From positions 31,310,001 to 31,374,000 of the forward strand of contig NC_135758.1 in the NCBI RefSeq assembly GCF_052425735.1: a stretch of 64,000 nt of DNA, given 5' to 3'. The translations under genes were made by a program, and so were the position numbers. Below the pieces are notes generated by a model. It had not been told where the DNA came from, ran no database searches, and saw only the letters and a program-made list of their open reading frames with translations. The DNA comes from Oculina patagonica (taxonomy: Eukaryota). Every line of letters begins with the position of its first letter. Within the stretch, counting starts at the first letter, position 1. Of this stretch, positions 243 to 62,558 are shown in pieces.

Positions 243-2724
243 GGACTATCTACCTATCTAACTAACTACAAAAATTTAATAACAACAAATTCAAAATAAC
301 AAAAGAAAAGTCTGCTTTTCATGGAGGCCGTGTCTAAAATTTACTTAAAATTTAGATATTACTTCAAACTGTGCCGACTTAATTTAGATTTGAAATCGGC
401 CAGTGAAGATGCTTGTCTTAGGTCTACAGGTAAGTTGTTCCACAACTGAGCAGTCCACTGTATGAAAAACTTTTCTTGAGATAATCAGTTCGAGGTTGTT
501 GAAGAACGAATTTGTTTTCGGTATTCCTTAAACGATAAGCACTAACATCGTCACGATATACGAATCTTGATCTCAGATAATCAGGAGTCATACCATGTAA
601 TGTTTTATACATTAGGATAGAGTTCTGTTTCAATCTTTGATAATAGAGTCTTCTCCACCCCAGTGTCCGGAACAAATCATTTAAATTACTATCATAGCTC
701 GCAGACATTAGGGTACGAGCTGCGCGGTTTTGAAGCCTTTGCAGTTTTTCAGCAAGGCCCTTGTTACAGCTTCCCCACACTACGTTGCAATAATCAAATT
801 GTGGTTGAATAAGGCTATTATAAATTTTGATTAAAATATTAAATGGAGTGAGATGCCGAATTCGTTTAATTGCACCAATGGCACAAGCTATCTTCTTAGA
901 AATGTTTTCAATATGACACTCCCAGTTTATATTTTGATCAACATAAACTCCGAGGGATTTAGCAGAGGTTTCTTGTTCTATTGCGTTCTCATTTATAGTA
1001 AGAGAGGGACTTTTCATAAATTGTGATAACTTCTGCCTTGATGCAATAAGCATAAACTCAGTTTTCGTCATATTTAGAGTAAGCTTGTTAGCAGACAGCC
1101 ATTCGTACACATTTCTCAGGTCGTGATTAAGGCGATAATTTATATGCTCAATGTCAGTGCTAGCAAGTGTTAGGCTAGTATTATCTGCGTACATTCTGGG
1201 TTCCGAATATGTCCGACAGTGTGGTAAGTCATTAATATATATCAAAAACAGAAGAAGTCCCAAAATTGTTCCCTGGGGAACACCACATCTTAGACATTTC
1301 GGAGTTGACTTACAAGAATTAATATGACAAATCTGTGTTCGATTATCTAAATAAGAAGCAAAGCATTGATGACTGGTTCAACAATTCCCATAGTATTGCA
1401 ATTTTCGCAACAAAATATCGTGATCTACTGTATCAAATGCCTTTTTGAGATCTAAAAAGACTACGGCATTAACAAGACCACGGTCTATATCCAAGGCCCA
1501 GCTATCTGTTGCTTCGATAAGTGCAGTGAGCGTAGAATGCAGAGACCGAAAACCAGATTGGTGGCACGAGAGAAAGTTGTTTTTTGTTAAATAATGATAA
1601 AGTTGATCGTAAATTATCCGTTCAAAGACTTTGGCCACAACTGGAATTACTGATATTGGCCGATAATTCGTCGGATCAGAACGCTTCCCAGAATTTTTAT
1701 ACAATGGAGTGACTCTGGCAGATTTCCACTCATCGGGAAAGATACCCGTCATTAGGGATTGATTAAATATATGAGTGAGAGATTCCGCCAGTAAATCAGG
1801 ACATTCCCTTAGAAGTTTCGCTGAAATATTATCTAATCCTGTTGCCTTTGACCTACAAAGCTTTGATAGTAGTGCAAAATCACGTGTAGGTGTTGTTTTT
1901 TCAAAAACAAAATTTTTATCAGTTGCGGTAAGAAATTCGTCGAAGGATTTATCAACTTCTGTTACGTCTCCACTAAGGCCTGGCCCAACTTCTGTGAAAA
2001 AGCAGTTTAGCATTTCTGCTATATCTGTTTGAACTTCAGATTTTACCCCACTATATTCCATTTCATTAATAGCAGTTTTATTGGATTTTCGTGAGGTCAG
2101 TTCATTGATTGTTTTCCATGTTTTCCTTTGATCCCCACAACAATTGTTGAAGGCATTTTCATAATACGCTTTTTTAGCGCTGTTAATTTCCCAATTCACT
2201 TGATTTTTAACCATTCAAAATTGGTTCCAAATAAATGGATCCTTTGTCTTAATAGCCTTTCTTTTGAGGCGGTTTCTGAAATTCATCCGCTTTTTTAAAA
2301 TAGTGGTTATCCATGGTGATTTAGAATCTCGTGTCCGTTTGGTCTTCATCGGTGCGTGCTTTTCACATACATTCAGGAATAATTCTTTCCACCTCCTCCA
2401 CATATCATTAGGATCATACAATTTCTTTATATCATCCCAGGGTTGGGCTAAAATATCCGCATAGAAATTTGCGCTATTAAAATGTTTAAACTGTCTATAT
2501 GTTATCAAGTTAACTCCTTTGGAGAAAGTGGGAATTGAAATTTTTCGATATGCATAAACTAAACTGTGATCACTTACATTCTCTGCCCGATTTGTGAAAA
2601 TCAGATCAATTAAAGTACTTGTAGTAGGTGTAATTCTGGTAGGTTCATTAATGAGTTGTTCCAATCCATAAATATCTGTTATGTTAAGAAGAGCTTTCAC
2701 ATTAGCATTGTCTTTGGATTGCAA
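186..2724 (-). mobile_element. CR1/L2-group non-LTR retrotransposon ORF2 (reverse transcriptase; endonuclease mostly deleted), frameshifted, with (TTATC)n 3' tail
   Basis: ORFs 2215-2724, 1378-2214 and 424-1263 carry NYRPIS, QSGFR, FLDLKKAFDTVDH, LLFLIYINDLP and YADN (degenerate YADD). A GATAA microsatellite tail lies at ~186-200. Confidence 0.93.
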
Positions 2725-2729
2725 TACCT

Positions 2730-5700
2730 TTCTTGTTAAGGTGGAGTTTGTAATTGTTCAGACATGTTTCGTCGATGTTCAAGTGTTCGACAAAGCCCCA
2801 GCCATTTTGATTACAAAATGTTTTTAAAACTTTGTTGCAGTCCTTTACTTTCTTCTTTGTGTGATTGCAGAAATGGTTACACTAGTGTTAGGAGAGTTTG
2901 TAGCAATCATATTTCCTAGGTCGACGATTTCCTCCGCCACATTCCGAGCAGAGGATGAATTTTTCAGATCATTTGTTCCGACATGGAGGATTATCGCCTT
3001 CGATTTTGTAGCCAAGCTTGGTTGCAGATAATGCTTCATGTCTGTGGTTGTAGCACCAGGGAAACTTCTCACAGTTACGCGCCGTTTAGCTGCCCGACTT
3101 AATAAGTCCTTGCGTAAACCTTTGACAATCGAATCTCCAACAATGATTGTGCCTTCATTGGGTTTTTGCTCCCCTTGGTCGTTCTCACTAGTATCGTTGT
3201 TTTCTGTTTGTAGTTGCTGGTTCTGGGAACTAGCTTTGCCTTTCTTTTTCTTCTTCCCTCGTTTAGGGTTATTGGACTTGTTTGATTTAACGGGTTGCAA
3301 GTCATCAGAAGCAGCTTGTTTATCGTGTGATCCTAACGAATCTTCGGCGGAAGCAGGTTGTGGATCGTGTGATCCTGACGATTGATCAGAAGAAAGTATT
3401 TTGATTGCTTCAAGGAGGCTAGCCCTTTCTTTCTCAAGATGGTCAATGGTAGATTCATAAGTTGTGCATTTGAGCCGCAGTTCGTCTAGTTCTCAGGGGA
3501 ACCCAACGGAATATTTCGTTAAAATATCTGTTCGGAAGACGATTTGAGATCTAGAATTTTCGGAACATTCATTGTAAATTTTTTTGCTTGCCTGCCTTTC
3601 CTAGGATTTTCGAATATCTAAAAAATGGTATAATTGTTCATTTTTAACGGATTTTAACTCTAAAAAGGTCACCTAGAATTTTCGGGAGCCCTTCTCTGGC
3701 TGAATTTTTTCGAAAAGGTAAGTTTTGATCCCTTTAACTTTGATCACTAGACTTTCAGCTAGGAAATCCGAACAGATAAAAAATTTTTAGGGGATATATA
3801 TCTACCGTTTAAATACTAAAATACGTTCAACGGTGCTATCTTTAAGTGGTTTTGAACTATATTCTCGATGGGTGCCCCTGAGTTCTTGTTGTAGTGGCCG
3901 TAATCCGTCTCTATTAGTTAGACTGGATTTAATGCCGCTTATTTCGGACCAGACCTTTGCAATTTCTTTAGAGAATTTCTCACTCAAGTTGTTAATTAGT
4001 ACTTCGCCAGAGTTGAGGGCATGTTGAGCGTGTTTGAATGATTCGCTTTCGCTCTCGCTTTCATTCTTGTTGTCGTTCTCGCCCAGAGCAACTTCATCAA
4101 CTTCAAAATTCAAAGTTGGTTTTGAGGTATACGGTATACGGTATACAGGGGAATTTAAAATGGGATATACAGTGTTTTTACACTGAACTTGGGCATTTTG
4201 GGGTATAAAGTATACTGTGTTTTTCCAAAGTTTTGTATTTTGCATGATTTGGAGGGAAAATATTGGGTATAATTTATTGGGTACAGGTTTCTCGAGTATA
4301 TTGGCTAGGTCGACGATTTTCTCCGCCACATTCCGAGCAGAGGATGAATTTTTCAGATCATTTGTTCCGACATGGAGGATTATCGCCTTCGATTTTGTAG
4401 CCAAGCTTGGTTGCAGATAATGCTTCATGTCTGTGGTTGTAGCACCAGGGAAACTTCTCACAGTTACGCGCCGTTTAGCTGCCCGACTTAATAAGTCCTT
4501 GCGTAAACCTTTGACAATCGAATCTCCAACAATGATTGTGCCTTCATTGGGTTTTTGCTCCCCTTGGTCGTTCTCACTAGTATCGTTGTTTTCTGTTTGT
4601 AATTGCTGGTTCTGGGAACTAGCTTTGCCTTTCTTTTTCTTCTTCCCTCGTTTAGGGTTATTGGACTTGTTTGATTTAACGGGTTGCCAGTCGTCAGAAG
4701 CAGGTTGTTTATCGTGTGATCCTAACGAATCTTCGGCGGAAGCAGGTTGTTTATCGTATGATCCTTACGAATCTTCGGCGGAAGCAGGTTGTGGATCGTG
4801 TGATCCTGACGATTGATCAGAAGAAAGTATTTTGATTACTTCAAGGAGGCTAGCCCTTTCTTTCTCAAAATGGTCAATGGTAGATTCATATAAGTTGTGC
4901 ATTTGAGCCGCAGTTCGTCTAGTTCTTGTTGTAGTGGCCGTAATCCGTCTCTATTAGTTAGACTGGATTTAATGCCGCTTATTTCGGACCAGACCTTTGC
5001 AATTTCTTTAGAGAATTTCTCACTCAAGTTGTTAATTAGTACTTCGCCAGTGTTGAGGGCATGTTGAGCGTGTTCGAATGATTCGCTTTCGCTTTCGCTC
5101 TCGCTTACATTCTTGTTGTCGTTCTCGCCCAGAGCAACTTCATCAACTTCAAAATTCAAAGTTCAGAATTCAAAGTTGGTTTTGAGGTATACGGTATACG
5201 GTATACAGGGGAATTTAAAATAGGATATACAGTGTTTTTACACTGAACTTGGACATTTTTGGGTATAAAGTATACTGTGTTTTTCCAAAATTTTGTATTT
5301 TGCATGATTTGGAGGGAAAATATTGGGTATAATTTATTGGGTACAGGTTTCTCGAGTATATTGGCTAGGTCGACGATTTTCTCCGCCACATTCCGAGCAG
5401 AGGATGATTTTTTTCAGATCATTTGTTCCGACATGGAGGATTATCGCCTTCGGTTTTGTAGCCAAGCTTGGTTGCAGATAATGGTAGATGGTCAATGGTA
5501 GATTCATAAGTTGTGCATTTAAGCCGCAGTTCGTCTAGTTCTTGTTGTAGTGGCCGTAATCCGTCTCTATTAGTTAGACTGGATTTAATGCCGCTTATTT
5601 CGGACCAGACCTTTGCAATTTCTTTAGAGAATTTCTCACTCAAGTTGTTAATTAGTACTTCGCCAGTGTTGAGGGCATGTTGAGCGTGTTTGAATGATTC

Positions 5701-6417
5701 GCTTTCGCTCTCGCTTTCATTCTTGTTGTCGTTCTCGCCCAGAGCAACTTCATCAACTTCAAAATTCAAAGTTGGTTTTGAGGTATACGGTATACGGTAT
5801 ACAGGGGAATTTAAAATGGGATATACAGTGTTTTTACACTGAACTTGGGCATTTTGGGGTATAAAGTATACTGTGTTTTTCCAAAATTTTGTATTTTGCA
5901 TGAATTGGAGGGAAAATATTGGGTATAATTTATTGGGTACAGGTTTCTCGAGTATATTTCCTAGGTCGACGATTTTCTCCGCCACATTCCGAGCAGAGGA
6001 TGAATTTTTCAGATCATTTGTTCCGACATGGAGGATTATCGCCTTCGATTTTGTAGCCAAGCTTGGTTGCAGATAATGCTTCATGTCTGTGGTTGTAGCA
6101 CCAGGGAAACTTCTCACAGTAACGCGCCGTTTAGCTGCCCGACTTAATAAGTCCTTGCGTAAACCTTTGACAATCGAATCTCCAACAATGATTGTGCCTT
6201 CATTGGGTTTTTGCTCCCCTTGGTCGTTCTCACTAGTATCGTTGTTTTCTGTTTGTAGTTGCTGGTTCTGGGAACTAGCTTTGCCTTTCTTTTTCGTCTT
6301 CCCTCGTTTAGGGTAATTGGACTTGTTTGATTTAACGGGTTGCCATTCGCTTTCGCTGTCATTCTTGTTCTCGTTCTCGCCCAGAGCAACTTCATCAACT
6401 TCAAAATTCAAAGTTCA
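2730..6417 (-). mobile_element. ORF1 of the same LINE (coiled coil plus SGNH/GDSL esterase-like domain), present as four scrambled tandem pieces
   Basis: IIVGDSIVK, VRSFPGATT and ILHVGTNDL are SGNH blocks typical of CR1-type ORF1. They repeat at ~2845, ~4305, ~5365 and ~5955. Confidence 0.85.
3494..3880. mobile_element. MITE with CAGGGG(A/C)ACCCA termini inserted in LINE ORF1
   Basis: TIR caggggaaccca / tgggtgcccctg; AGTTCT duplicated on both sides; empty site seen in the repeated copies at ~4920 and ~5537. Confidence 0.85.
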
Positions 6418-9763: not shown

Positions 9764-10390
9764 TCAATCATCAAATAACGTTTCTGATTTGTCTTGAGAT
9801 ACCGTTTCTGACTTGAGTAGATCTTTTAAGTTCTCATACTCCAAGCCACTTGCATTTCCGTCTATTTTTAAAAATGCGTAAATGACGTCCTTAACCCTGC
9901 GTGGTACATAAAGACCCACAAAGTAATGGAAAGCCGTTTCAGCGGGCTCTGCCATATTAGAAAGAGAATCTTGCAGGTAACCCACAGCCCACCAACAGGC
10001 GACCAAACATGCAGTCGAGGCTGCCGCGCAACACAGAGGCACCGAGAGGACTAGGACTAGAGCAAACAGCCCCGCGCCCACGAGCGAGGACTCGGCCATG
10101 ACAAACACAACAAACGAAATGAGAAATGTAGCAAAGACAAATCCCAGGAATACCATGCAAGGTACGGAGCCAGCAAGAACTGCAGTGCTCACGAATAAGG
10201 CAGTCACCGGTCTTCGCCAGGAGAATCTGAGAAGCCATGACAGTCGCGAGCCTCGCTTGTTGATTGGTTGTTGATTCTGCCAATAGTGGAGCATCGTTTC
10301 AGGCTTGTTGTCCGGCAAATGGAATCTGACTCGTTTATGAATCAGCGTGTGAAAACTATCTTTACTATCACTGCCTTGAAGACTTTCCAT
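9764..10390 (-). CDS. LDAF1: Promethin / lipid droplet assembly factor 1 (TMEM159)-like protein, copy 1, intact single coding exon
   Basis: Long hydrophobic double-hairpin region RRPVTALFVSTAVLAGSVPCMVFLGFVFATFLISFVVFVMAESSLVGAGLFALVLVL resembles the promethin family. The likely start is MESLQG at 10390, which aligns with the copy 2 start. Confidence 0.75.
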   Translation of the reverse strand: MESLQGSDSKDSFHTLIHKRVRFHLPDNKPETMLHYWQNQQPINKRGSRLSWLLRFSWRRPVTALFVSTAVLAGSVPCMVFLGFVFATFLISFVVFVMAESSLVGAGLFALVLVLSVPLCCAAASTACLVACWWAVGYLQDSLSNMAEPAETAFHYFVGLYVPRRVKDVIYAFLKIDGNASGLEYENLKDLLKSETVSQDKSETLFDD

Positions 10391-10592
10391 TATCTTGGGG
10401 AGAAGATTGAAACGTTCAGGATATAAAATTGGCCGCATTCAATTTACTTTTTGAATTCGACATTTCCTTTTTTCATGTTCAAATAGTTTTGATCATTATT
10501 CGTTTGTCCTTTATGTGTCGTAAGCAATTTCCCCATGAAAAAGTTTCGTCATAACAAAAGTAGGTCCGCTATATACGTACATGCGACTACAC

Positions 10593-19220: not shown

Positions 19221-19389
19221 ATCTCAGTAAAATCGAAACGTGTAAAAACTGTGAACTTTACTGTCAAGAAAACCCAAACAGATACATGTATGCCAAAGCA
19301 AAACATGTAAAACAATAGGGCGGCGAAATAACAATGAAAAGAAAAAACAAAAGAAGTTGCGAAGGGGTTGGCAAACAAAAGATAACTAG

Positions 19390-20300
19390 TAAATAATAAA
19401 GATGGTAAATTTTAAGCTCGGTAATAAATAATAAAGATAAGATGTTCTACATGACACGAGCATGGGACAAAGAAAAATTCTGAGTCCCCGACGGGAATCG
19501 AACCCATGGCCTCCCAGAATACCGGTTGGGCGCTCTAACCAACTGAGCTACGAGAGACTCGTTGTGAGCTGGGCCATTTTTACTAGGTTGATATGTGACA
19601 CGCGTCCTGCATACTGCTAGGATCAGCAATGTCGAATTCATCAAGTTTTGTAGTAAATAATAAAGATGGTAAATTTTAAGCTCGGTAATAAATAATAAAG
19701 ATAAGATGTTCTACATGACACGAGCATGGGACAAAGAAAAATTCTGAGTCCCCGACGGGAATCGAACCCATGGCCTCCCAGAATACCGGTTGGGCGCTCT
19801 AACCAACTGAGCTACGAGAGACTCGTTGTGAGCTGGGCCATTTTTACTAGGTTGATATGTGACACGCGTGTCACATATCAACCTAGTAAAAATGGCCCAG
19901 CTCACAACGAGTCTCTCGTAGCTCAGTTGGTTAGAGCGCCCAACCGGTATTCTGGGAGGCCATGGGTTCGATTCCCGTCGGGGACTCAGAATTTTTCTTT
20001 GTCCCATGCTCGTGTCATGTAGAACATCTTATCTTTATTATTTATTACCGAGCTTAAAATTTACCATCTTTATTATTTACTACAAAACTTGATGAATTCG
20101 ACATTGCTGATCCTAGCAGTATGCAGGACGCGTGTCACATATCAACCTAGTAAAAATGGCCCAGCTCACAACGAGTCTCTCGTAGCTCAGTTGGTTAGAG
20201 CGCCCAACCGGTATTCTGGGAGGCCATGGGTTCGATTCCCGTCGGGGACTCAGAATTTTTCTTTGTCCCATGCTCGCGTCATGTAGAACATCTTATCTTT
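19390..20300. mobile_element. Fold-back insertion of 264-bp tRNA-related (SINE-like) tandem units
   Basis: Near-perfect palindrome 19433-20300 centred on 19866/19867; 13-bp TSD AAAAGATAACTAG at 19377-19389 and 20301-20313. Confidence 0.9.
19909..19988 (+). ncRNA. tRNA-like sequence (pseudo-tRNA / SINE head); identical copies at 20173-20252 (+), 19745-19824 (-) and 19481-19560 (-)
   Basis: A box TAGCTCAGTTGG, D stem GCTC/GAGC, B box GGTTCGATTCC, T stem ATGGG/CCCGT and a bulged 9-bp acceptor-like stem. The 18-nt anticodon arm is non-canonical (no U33). TTTTT lies just downstream. Confidence 0.75.
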
Positions 20301-20849
20301 AAAAGATAACTAGCAATATGACACCAAATTAGATGCAAATGACGCAAAATAGAAAACATGACAGGAAAACAACAACAGAATAAAAGCAATAATTAAGGCA
20401 ATAAACGAGGGGAGAATGAGAACCATGTAAATCCAACCTAGACTAGACAGCTACAAAATCTTTAAGCGTGCAAACTCAAAACTTGGAAATTGGGACACTG
20501 AACTGAACTCCACAAACCTATGTTCGGGAGGTGAGACACCACATTGAAAAAGACTCACGCAATAAAATCAAAAAATGGGCGCCTAGGGAATAGCACTGCT
20601 CAAATGCGAAATTTGTGAGGCAAAGTATGCATAACAAAAACATCAAAAAACAACACAGCCAAATAAAAGCACTTCACAAAACCCGTTGTTTGTGAGGCAA
20701 AATACACTGACGAAACATAAGTTTCACCGGAAGGAACGAAACAAACCAAAGTGTACAAATCAAAGGGAAGCTAAAGGAGTGGAAAGCAAAGTACGCAACA
20801 AAAAGCCTCACGGTTACAAGTACAAATAAAGCATATAAGCGTACAGTTC

Positions 20850-55821: not shown

Positions 55822-62558
<6,737 letters not shown>

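What the first reader, a model, noticed from the sequence alone, without database searches (positions are those of the whole stretch)
19377..20313. 0.87-kb near-perfect palindrome of tandem tRNA-like units inserted as one event: candidate Penelope-mobilised tRNA retroelement
Seen: 264-bp units, ~1.8 on the minus strand then ~1.6 on the plus strand, give four identical tRNA-like heads. The arms differ at one position that I could find (~20277). The inversion point is the unit's own ACGCGT palindrome with no spacer. The left arm overhangs by 43 bp, and a 13-bp TSD brackets everything. The tRNA-like part is internal to the unit and is followed at once by TTTTT (Pol III terminator), with no poly-A tail, unlike a classical SINE. 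Established: partial-tandem and inverted arrangements are hallmarks of Penelope-like element insertions and retrozymes. Inference: a non-autonomous tRNA-containing element copied from a multimeric or circular RNA with snap-back priming. The architecture matches the hammerhead insertion at 61038-61367 (44-bp overhang, 11-bp TSD).
Basis: partly seen in the sequence, partly recalled or inferred. Interest (0 to 1): 0.8.

Follow-up and report, generated by a model that had tools for sequence, protein, structure and literature searches.

The report
tRNA-like hitchhiker of Penelope retroelements
This coral palindrome is one very recent insertion of a small, abundant jumping element that carries a tRNA look-alike and no ribozyme, and its insertion footprints match those of the genome's own Penelope-like retroelements, which probably copy it.

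Summary
Window 19390-20300 is a head-to-head inverted pair of 264-bp units, about 1.8 on the minus strand and 1.6 on the plus strand. The two 435-nt arms differ only at 20277 and join with no spacer in the unit's ACGCGT. A 13-bp target-site duplication (TSD) flanks the insert, and the left arm runs 43-45 nt further out. Each unit holds a tRNA-like cloverleaf followed by T5. No ribozyme was found.

The family is large and young: 698 exact 33-mer hits and about 2,700 tail-motif hits. Of 80 insertions, 38 are head-to-head, 41 are single arms and none is tail-to-tail. The 3' ends fall in two zones about 42 nt apart, while the 5' ends vary. Head-to-head inserts pair one short end with one long end in 31 of 32 cases. 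TSDs are 9-15 bp with a symmetric target motif.

An autonomous Penelope-like element (PLE) family in this genome shows the same rule in 12 of 12 pairs. So does a hammerhead-core insert in this window.

PLE-type mobilisation with priming from both target strands is well supported. Snap-back priming is not. A circular RNA template, the partner element and long-read proof of the centre remain open. Other first-stage notes had already flagged this family elsewhere in the genome.

The parts
19377..19389 (.). Left copy of the 13-bp target-site duplication AAAAGATAACTAG. Its last 3 bases (TAG) could also belong to the element.
19390..19866 (-). Left arm: about 1.8 units in antisense orientation. Its outer end is at unit position about 213-216, the long (L) 3'-end zone.
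19387..19431 (-). One-sided tail: the 43-45 nt by which the left arm extends beyond the right arm (unit positions 172-216). It lies between the two 3'-end zones.
   Evidence: PLE tail as described in PMC8557442 and PMC11167929
19864..19869 (.). Inversion point: the unit's own self-complementary ACGCGT. It acts as a 6-nt overlap between the two arms, with no spacer.
19867..20300 (+). Right arm: about 1.6 units in sense orientation. Its outer end is at unit position about 170-171, the short (S) 3'-end zone.
20301..20313 (.). Right copy of the 13-bp target-site duplication.
19482..19558 (-). tRNA-like module 1. It has A-box-like and B-box-like motifs and an aberrant 10-nt anticodon loop.
19746..19822 (-). 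tRNA-like module 2.
19911..19987 (+). tRNA-like module 3, followed by T5 at 19992-19996.
20175..20251 (+). tRNA-like module 4, followed by T5 at 20256-20260.
20277..20277 (+). The only difference between the arms (C here, T in the three other units). It is either a post-insertion mutation or a copying error.
20031..20090 (+). Two copies, 35 nt apart, of the motif ATCTTTATTATTTA. They contain the S and L zones where family copies end, which I infer to be reverse-transcription start zones.
   Evidence: (D4)
61025..61378 (.). Comparison insert of another family carrying a hammerhead-core motif. It is head-to-head, with a 13-bp TSD (61025-61037 and 61366-61378) and a 44-nt one-sided tail (61038-61081).
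   Evidence: no Rfam hammerhead hit

Best explanation
The palindrome is one very recent insertion of a high-copy, non-autonomous retroelement. Its 262-264-nt repeating unit contains a tRNA-like module with a Pol III-type A box, B box and T5 run, and no self-cleaving ribozyme. I infer that the reverse transcriptase/GIY-YIG endonuclease of a Penelope-like element (PLE) copies it.

Proposed mechanism:
1. The endonuclease nicks both target strands 12-14 bp apart, at the same T-rich motif on each strand.
2. Each 3'-OH primes reverse transcription of sense-strand element RNA, starting at one of two internal start zones about 42 nt apart. Each zone lies in one copy of a duplicated ATCTTTATTATTTA motif.
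3. When both strands prime, one uses the short site and the other the long site. This gives the one-sided 43-45-nt tail.
4. Both cDNAs run towards the RNA 5' side over more than one unit, so the template is multimeric or is traversed repeatedly.
5. Their 3' ends are then joined by microhomology or with filler. In this copy both cDNAs ended in the self-complementary ACGCGT, which lets two same-sense cDNAs anneal at the same position and produces a spacer-less perfect palindrome.
6. Gap repair creates the 13-bp TSD.

Shown here: the architecture, the end zones, the short-plus-long rule, the TSDs, the target motif, and the parallel with a real PLE family. Inferred: RNA as the template, internal initiation, a dimeric enzyme complex, and which PLE is the partner.
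For: - Family size: 698 exact hits of a 33-mer. The 24-nt tail motif gives 2,666 hits at up to 3 mismatches, against 4 for the reversed control. Copies are 74-100% identical to the window unit.
- Orientation: of 80 insertions, 38 are head-to-head (-,+), 41 are single arms and 0 are tail-to-tail.
- 3' ends cluster at unit positions 169-182 and 209-222. 5' ends are spread across the whole unit, and 67 of 115 arms exceed one unit.
- Head-to-head inserts combine one short and one long end in 31 of 32 cases (binomial p = 7.7e-9), whereas single arms use either end (14 S, 20 L).
- 34 insertions have TSDs of 9-15 bp, with a mode of 12-14.
- The target motif is symmetric at both TSD borders: A at position -2 in 55 of 68 half-sites against a 32% background. 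This implies the same nick specificity on both strands.
- Inner junctions show 1-7-nt overlaps in 12 of 38 inserts, or filler that sometimes contains extra unit fragments in either orientation.
[quoted passage not shown] Its family has two 3'-end classes, and 12 of 12 head-to-head pairs are short plus long.
- GIY-YIG hits genome-wide lie mostly in (-,+) pairs: about 22 against 3 by my reading of the list.
- Literature: PLE insertions are 5'-truncated partial tandems, often with an adjacent inverted 5'-truncated copy and a 30-40-bp tail at one end (PMC8557442). A purified PLE protein cleaves and extends both strands and starts reverse transcription at two internal RNA sites that delimit the tail (PMC11167929).
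Against: - No autonomous PLE sharing sequence with the unit was found. The single PLE compared has no similarity. No perfect tail-motif hit on contigs C1-C2 lies next to a listed GIY-YIG hit.
- There is no direct RNA evidence. RNA-run contigs contain only pieces of the unit and cannot show strand, ends or circles.
- The T5 run right after the tRNA-like module should stop most Pol III transcripts before they reach the start zones, so the source of the multi-unit RNA is unexplained.
- The palindrome centre was not confirmed by independent long reads.
Confidence: 0.75

Rival explanations
1. A refinement of the best explanation, not an exclusive rival: the template is a unit-length or dimer-length circular RNA, and the reverse transcriptase goes round it repeatedly. 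This is the retrozyme-like rolling-circle model. The tRNA-like module would supply the processing or ligation signals that the hammerhead supplies in retrozymes.
For: - Units are joined seamlessly in any circular permutation, and 58% of arms exceed one unit.
- The window copy has four identical units.
- One insert (L033) has alternating ABABA units, with four private variants shared by units 2 and 4 and others shared by units 1, 3 and 5. That is what repeated copying of a dimer would give. Another (L027) has three private variants shared by all four units.
- Coral hammerhead retrozymes do form abundant circular RNAs (PMC7229834).
Against: - No ribozyme of any Rfam class was found in the unit, even at E up to 10.
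- The unit RNA is not unusually structured (z = -0.75 and -0.96), unlike rod-like retrozyme circles.
- 5' ends show hot spots at unit 234-264 (2.3-fold) and at the tRNA 5' end, 41-50 (1.8-fold), which suit linear RNA ends or pause sites.
- In the 115 arms sampled, none exceeds 4.6 units.
- In vitro, unprocessed multimeric RNA is the dominant PLE substrate (PMC11167929).
Confidence: 0.25
2. For this copy only: a single cDNA folded back at ACGCGT and copied itself (snap-back priming).
For: - The arms are identical apart from one base.
- Their lengths differ by exactly the tail (483 against 438 nt including the shared hexamer), as expected if one arm was copied from the other up to the short site.
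Against: - A hairpin with no loop cannot form within one molecule, whereas two separate cDNAs can anneal through a 6-nt palindrome.
- In the other 37 head-to-head inserts the arm lengths are unrelated and either arm can be the longer, so the family does not generally use snap-back.
- The PLE protein extends both target strands in vitro (PMC11167929).
Confidence: 0.15
3. It is an ordinary tRNA-derived SINE mobilised by a LINE, with the inversions produced by L1-style twin priming.
For: - It has a tRNA-like head with A and B boxes, variable TSDs, 5' truncation and 1-4 nt of microhomology at the 3' junctions (mean 1.6 nt).
- A few arms start at the tRNA 5' end (unit positions 41-49) and end at the short site, like Pol III monomers.
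- LINE-type RT genes exist in the genome, for example at window 424-2214.
Against: - There is no poly-A or simple-repeat tail.
- In every head-to-head insert with intact outer ends, both arms start from the same 3' initiation region, unlike L1 twin priming, where the inverted arm starts at an internal RNA site.
- The short-plus-long rule (31 of 32) and the symmetric target motif on both strands match the PLE family tested here (12 of 12), not what is known of LINE endonucleases.
- Most arms are multimeric.
Confidence: 0.08
4. The palindrome is an assembly or fold-back read artefact, or a DNA-level inverted duplication or foldback DNA transposon.
For: - Perfect palindromes are a known artefact of long-read chemistry.
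- The centre could not be checked with independent long reads.
Against: - A 13-bp TSD brackets the whole structure.
- The two outer ends are asymmetric in exactly the family-typical way, one short and one long.
- 38 of 80 family insertions on many chromosomes are head-to-head.
- Contigs from two runs bridge the left junction.
- A DNA transposon would have identical termini and a fixed TSD length. Here single arms with variable inner ends are common.
Confidence: 0.04

Closest known systems
Penelope-like elements (PLEs) and their non-autonomous derivatives, such as the non-autonomous Chlamys elements including MRC1 (PMC8557442; PMC11167929)
   Same: 5' truncation with fixed 3' ends; partial tandem copies; an adjacent inverted 5'-truncated copy; a one-sided tail bounded by two reverse-transcription start sites; variable TSDs; AT-rich targets. 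A PLE family in this genome follows the same short-plus-long rule.
   Different: There is no coding capacity and no detected sequence similarity to an autonomous PLE. The unit carries a tRNA-like Pol III-type module. The tail is 42-45 nt rather than 30-40 nt.
Metazoan non-LTR retrozymes: hammerhead-bearing tandem repeats of about 170-400 nt, described in the coral Acropora millepora among others (PMC7229834; bioRxiv 10.64898/2026.07.22.740005)
   Same: Small non-coding units of about 260 nt, inserted as multimers with TSDs. They are abundant in a coral and are proposed to depend on PLEs.
   Different: No hammerhead or other known ribozyme. No rod-like fold. A tRNA-like module sits in the unit instead. 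No circular RNA has been shown.
tRNA-derived SINEs mobilised by LINEs
   Same: A tRNA-related module with A and B boxes; non-autonomous; short; high copy number; TSDs.
   Different: The tRNA-like part is internal to a repeating unit and is followed at once by T5. There is no LINE-type or poly-A tail. Most arms are multimeric and half of the insertions are head-to-head with two 3'-end zones.
Small-RNA-gene-bearing non-autonomous LTR elements: Cassandra, Helenus and Ajax (PMC10886601)
   Same: A Pol III-type small-RNA module recruited by a non-autonomous retroelement of a class other than LINEs.
   Different: Those are LTR elements with a primer-binding site and polypurine tract and short fixed TSDs. 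This one has the PLE-type footprint.

Membership tests
PLE-type (Penelope-like) insertion / non-autonomous PLE dependant | Fixed 3' ends with variable 5' truncation | tested here: met
   3' ends fall in two narrow zones and 5' ends are spread over the unit.
PLE-type (Penelope-like) insertion / non-autonomous PLE dependant | Partial tandem copies (pseudo-LTR-like) within one insertion | tested here: met
   67 of 115 arms are longer than one unit, and one TSD brackets the whole insert.
PLE-type (Penelope-like) insertion / non-autonomous PLE dependant | Adjacent inverted 5'-truncated copy, head-to-head | tested here: met
   38 of 80 insertions are (-,+) and 0 are (+,-).
PLE-type (Penelope-like) insertion / non-autonomous PLE dependant | Short tail extension present at only one end, bounded by two RT start sites | tested here: met
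   31 of 32 head-to-head inserts are short plus long, with a 42-45-nt tail. The L088 PLE family follows the same rule, 12 of 12.
PLE-type (Penelope-like) insertion / non-autonomous PLE dependant | Sequence shared with an autonomous PLE (3' end or pLTR) | tested here: inconclusive
   Only one PLE (L088) could be compared, and it shows no similarity.
PLE-type (Penelope-like) insertion / non-autonomous PLE dependant | Mobilisation by a PLE RT/GIY-YIG protein | not testable with these tools
   This needs biochemical or cell assays.
Metazoan non-LTR retrozyme | Hammerhead ribozyme in every unit | tested here: not met
   Rfam scan at E up to 10 over 19300-20400 found no ribozyme family. No CUGANGA core on either strand by inspection (sequence).
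Metazoan non-LTR retrozyme | Tandem units of about 170-400 nt flanked by TSDs | tested here: met
Metazoan non-LTR retrozyme | Unit-length circular RNA | not testable with these tools
   Only contigs of RNA runs were available.
tRNA-derived SINE (LINE-dependent) | tRNA-related Pol III promoter head at the 5' end of a monomer | tested here: inconclusive
   A and B boxes are present, but the module is internal to the repeating unit. Only 8 of 115 arms start at positions 41-50.
tRNA-derived SINE (LINE-dependent) | LINE-derived or A-rich/simple-repeat 3' tail | tested here: not met
   There is no poly-A or simple repeat; the ends lie inside the ATCTTTATTATTTA motifs. No LINE 3' end was compared.
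Functional tRNA gene | Canonical cloverleaf with a 7-nt anticodon loop and an assignable anticodon | tested here: not met
   ARAGORN reports tRNA-??? with a 4-base anticodon. The Rfam alignment covers model positions 4-67 and has a 10-nt insert in the anticodon region.
Foldback/MITE DNA transposon | Identical inverted termini and fixed-length TSD | tested here: not met
   Termini are asymmetric (short against long), TSDs are 9-15 bp, and single arms are common.

The most novel reading that the evidence does not exclude
The family is a ribozyme-free counterpart of retrozymes. The tRNA-like module would replace the hammerhead as the RNA-processing handle. Cellular tRNA enzymes (RNase P, RNase Z or the splicing endonuclease, plus a tRNA ligase) would cut multimeric transcripts to unit length and circularise them, and the circles would serve as rolling-circle templates for a PLE reverse transcriptase. 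This would show that PLE hitchhikers can swap a self-cleaving ribozyme for a host-processed tRNA mimic.
Probability: 0.12. Interest if true: 0.85.

Novelty: new variant of a known kind. Interest (0 to 1): 0.6.

Why it matters
How PLEs transpose is still poorly understood. The key in vitro findings come from a single lizard element: both strands are cleaved and extended, and reverse transcription starts at two internal sites.

This coral family offers thousands of short, young natural insertion products that show those same features in vivo. It also adds two quantitative constraints:
- Double-primed insertions almost always pair one short start with one long start.
- The target motif is symmetric on both strands. 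Together these suggest a dimeric enzyme complex engaging two adjacent sites.

The family also shows that a PLE-type hitchhiker need not carry a hammerhead and can carry a Pol III tRNA-like module instead. That blurs the line between SINEs and retrozymes. I found no description of such an element in the searchable literature.

On the practical side, such inverted multimers are hard for assemblers and repeat annotators, which may mis-file them as tRNA genes, satellites or foldback elements.

Tried and rejected
- **Ribozymes.** The Rfam gathering scan of the window found only the four tRNA hits. A permissive scan of the locus found no ribozyme; the miRNA hits there merely reflect the perfect hairpin. 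Rfam also gave no hammerhead hit for the 61-kb insert, although a CUGAUGAG...GAAA core is visible.
- **RNA structure.** Two permutations of the unit folded with z-scores of -0.75 and -0.96, so there is no viroid-like rod.
- **Snap-back as a general mechanism.** Rejected because arm lengths are unrelated between the two arms.
- **Partner search.** The unit has no similarity to the L088 PLE, to the rest of the window, or to another tRNA-plus-hammerhead family (L087) beyond the tRNA boxes. No listed tail-motif hit sits next to a listed GIY-YIG hit on C1. I did not try to get the same DNA by other tools.
- **Reads.** All runs are short Logan contigs. The depth tables are dominated by the roughly 700 or more family copies. 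No empty-site joint appeared among the 15 joints shown, and the centre could not be verified. RNA-run contigs hold only parts of the unit, so expression, strand and circularity remain unknown.
- **L083 neighbour.** A possible chimeric insert, with one tRNA-family arm and one PLE arm, could not be resolved. The PLE-like ORF breaks off after about 260 aa.
- **Literature.** Searches for PLE-mobilised SINEs returned nothing specific.
Full report
**1. The observation**

Window 19432-19866 and 19867-20301 form a 435-nt inverted repeat with no spacer, reported as 100% complementary. The repeat period is 264 bp. I set unit position 1 at window 19867.

- The left arm is antisense and runs from the centre out to unit position 216.
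- The right arm is sense and runs out to position 171.
- The arms differ at one base, 20277.
- The centre is the unit's ACGCGT at 19864-19869.
- A 13-bp direct repeat, AAAAGATAACTAG, flanks the whole structure at 19377-19389 and 20301-20313.
- The left arm is 43-45 nt longer than the right, depending on 1-3 ambiguous junction bases.

Each unit holds a tRNA-like module. Rfam tRNA scores 36.3 bits against a cut-off of 29. ARAGORN cannot name an anticodon because the anticodon loop is 10 nt long.

**2. The family**

The genome is a 529-Mb coral assembly.

- A 33-mer spanning the tRNA 3' part and the T5 run occurs 698 times exactly, with 0 for the reversed control.
- A 24-nt tail motif occurs 2,666 times with up to 3 mismatches, against 4 for the control.

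I mapped the unit onto 76 loci. Thirty-eight were best hits, and 38 were an unbiased series along contig C1. This gave 80 insertions away from locus edges:

| Class | Count |
|---|---|
| Head-to-head (-,+) | 38 |
| Single arm | 41 |
| Complex | 1 |
| Tail-to-tail | 0 |

In the unbiased C1 series about 43% are head-to-head. Identity to the window unit ranges from about 74% to 100%, so the family has been active for a long time and still looks active. Most copies have a 262-nt unit. The window copy belongs to a 264-nt variant with two extra bases.

**3. Ends**

The outer ends are always the sense-strand 3' ends. They fall in two zones, S (unit 169-182) and L (209-222). After removing bases that could equally come from the target, the modes are about 170-173 and 212-215. 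Both zones lie inside the two copies of a 14-nt motif, ATCTTTATTATTTA, which are 35 nt apart (D4).

The inner 5' ends are spread over the whole unit. They are enriched 2.3-fold at positions 234-264 and 1.8-fold at 41-50, the tRNA 5' end. Of 115 arms, 67 exceed one unit, and the longest spans 4.6 units.

The key regularity concerns head-to-head insertions whose two ends both fall in a zone. Thirty-one of 32 combine one S end with one L end (17 S-L, 14 L-S, 1 L-L, 0 S-S). The binomial p is 7.7e-9 against independent choice. Single arms use either zone, 14 S and 20 L. The window's 43-45-nt overhang is therefore not a peculiarity of this copy. It is the family rule.

**4. Target sites**

Thirty-four insertions have clear TSDs of 9-15 bp, with a mode of 12-14. 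When both TSD borders are aligned in the same polarity, the same motif appears on both strands: AAA(C/A)|AA. A occupies position -2 in 55 of 68 half-sites, against a 32% background. On the nicked strand this reads roughly TT|GTTT. The motif is symmetric, so both strands are nicked with the same specificity, 12-14 bp apart.

The 3' junctions carry a mean of 1.6 nt of possible target-element microhomology. This suggests that the exact start within a zone is tuned by a few base pairs.

**5. Inner junctions**

Twelve of 38 head-to-head junctions show 1-7-nt overlaps and five show 1-2-nt gaps. The rest carry 5-93 nt of filler, and one complex case has 210 nt. Several fillers contain extra short unit fragments in either orientation.

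Arm lengths within an insert are unrelated, for example 139 against 744 nt or 960 against 559 nt. Either the S-ended or the L-ended arm can be the longer. This rules out snap-back self-copying as the general mechanism and fits two independently primed cDNAs joined in the middle.

The window copy is the only one of the 38 in which both arms end at the same unit position (262, inside ACGCGT) with a 6-nt overlap. A self-complementary hexamer is exactly the kind of site where two same-sense cDNA 3' ends can anneal in register. That gives a perfect palindrome without a loop.

Both arms also reach the same template position if they started in the same unit of one RNA (171+264 and 216+264). This is compatible with run-off at an RNA 5' end near that site, because five arm 5' ends in the sample map to position 262. 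It is also compatible with selection of that junction by the palindromic microhomology.

**6. Link to Penelope-like elements**

The literature lists the PLE hallmarks: strong 5' truncation, partial tandems (pseudo-LTRs), an adjacent inverted 5'-truncated copy, and a 30-40-bp tail often present at only one end (PMC8557442). A purified PLE protein cleaves and extends both target strands. It starts reverse transcription at two internal RNA sites that delimit the tail, without homology to the target, and it prefers AT-rich DNA (PMC11167929).

I checked a real PLE in this genome.

- It is inserted head-to-head with a 1,271-nt, 100% identical inverted arm, a 14-bp TSD and a one-sided tail of about 95 nt.
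- Its 3' 531 nt searched against the genome gives two 3'-end classes, at query positions about 396-409 and about 489-508.
- All 12 head-to-head pairs in that list combine one short and one long end.
- Genome-wide GIY-YIG hits also lie mostly in (-,+) pairs, about 22 against 3 by my reading of the list.

It has a visible hammerhead core (CUGAUGAG, helix II, GAAA) and shows the same footprint: a 13-bp TSD and a 44-nt one-sided tail.

So three unrelated sequences in one genome share the signature: an autonomous PLE, a hammerhead-core repeat and the tRNA-like repeat. This is the main evidence that the tRNA-like family is mobilised by PLE machinery.

**7. What it is not**

- **Not a retrozyme by definition.** A permissive Rfam scan found no ribozyme family. 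There is no CUGANGA core on either strand. The unit RNA is not unusually structured (z = -0.75 and -0.96).
- **Not a classical LINE-dependent SINE.** There is no A-rich or simple-repeat tail. The tRNA-like part is internal to the repeating unit. Most arms are multimeric, and both arms begin at the same 3' region, unlike L1 twin priming.
- **Not a functional tRNA gene**.
- **Not a foldback DNA transposon.** The ends are asymmetric, the TSDs vary in length and single arms are common.

**8. Open points**

a. **Template form.**
- For repeated copying of a monomer or dimer: the four identical units in the window copy, the ABABA alternation in L033 and the uniformly shared variants in L027. This could be a circle or end-to-end template jumps.
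- For linear RNAs: the 5'-end hot spots, the lack of very long arms, and the published finding that unprocessed multimeric RNA is the preferred PLE substrate.

b. **Transcription.** The T5 run should stop most Pol III transcripts before the start zones. A minority of short arms (unit 41-49 to about 172-179) look like read-through Pol III monomers. The origin of longer RNAs is unknown. The tRNA-like module and the segment upstream of it vary less among copies (1.3-1.8% variant frequency per position) than positions 122-224 (3.8-4.2%). This hints that source copies need them.

c. **Partner.** None was identified.

d. **Independent confirmation.** Only short contigs of public runs could be laid. 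They bridge the left junction in runs X1 and X6, but they cannot resolve the centre or show an empty allele.

**9. Earlier notes of this scan**

Several first-stage notes describe the same or sister families elsewhere in this genome.

- One of them (s1-306412) is my locus L043. It shows the same structure.
- One followed-up note (s1-268517) concerns a different family that combines a hammerhead with a tRNA-like module. I fetched it as L087 and found no similarity to this unit beyond the tRNA boxes.

The scan has therefore found this kind of element before on other DNA of this genome.

**10. Verdict**

It is a new variant of a known kind. I found no description of a tRNA-bearing, ribozyme-free element with the PLE footprint in the searchable literature.

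The short-plus-long rule and the symmetric target motif are useful in vivo constraints on the PLE mechanism.

Noticed in passing
window 61025-61378: An insert of a different repeat family with a hammerhead-core motif (CUGAUGAG, helix II, GAAA). It is head-to-head with a 13-bp TSD (GGTATGTAATTTG) and a 44-nt tail on the left arm only. Rfam gives no hammerhead hit, so the ribozyme may be a minimal or truncated variant.
   Followed up: partly
L088 (G000:C8:10951000-10957500) and one search hit list: An autonomous PLE family with an 845-aa RVT_1 + GIY-YIG ORF and near-identical copies. It has two 3'-end classes about 93 nt apart, and 12 of 12 head-to-head pairs combine one short and one long end. 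The L088 copy has a 14-bp TSD.
   Followed up: yes
L083:920-2021 with L089 (G000:C1:46088500-46093600): A minus-strand arm of the tRNA-like family (920-1251) abuts, head-to-head, a plus-strand ORF (1230-2021) similar to the N-terminal region of the L088 PLE protein. This may be a chimeric insertion with one arm from each RNA. The PLE-like part breaks off, and another RT-bearing element follows, so a shared TSD could not be checked.
   Followed up: partly
L033:604-1815 (G000:C4:46281853-46283064): A single-arm insert of 4.6 units whose units alternate ABABA. Units 2 and 4 share four private variants, including a 4-nt insertion; units 1, 3 and 5 share others. This is expected if a dimeric template was copied repeatedly.
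   Followed up: partly
L075 and L076 (G000:C1:40600678-40601015 and 40617911-40618248): Two copies with identical structure and identity values about 17 kb apart. They probably belong to a segmental duplication rather than being separate insertions. A GIY-YIG hit lies between them at C1:40608261.
   Followed up: no
L087:780-1120 (G000:C1:39130480-39130820): A different small element combining a hammerhead-like core with a better tRNA-like module (Rfam tRNA 44 bits) followed by a T-run. It is unrelated in sequence to the 264-bp unit apart from the tRNA boxes.
   Followed up: partly
window 424-6411 (-): A LINE-like retroelement with RVT_1 ORFs (424-2214) downstream of ORFs that have weak GDSL/SGNH esterase matches (3802-6411). 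Its 3' end lies beyond the window start.
   Followed up: no
window 9764-10438 (-): A 224-aa ORF with a Promethin domain (E = 6.6e-12), probably a host gene exon.
   Followed up: no
34 TSD-bearing family insertions (loci L001-L081): A symmetric target-site motif, AAA(C/A)|AA, at both TSD borders. This implies the same nick specificity (about TT|GTTT) on both strands, 12-14 bp apart.
   Followed up: yes
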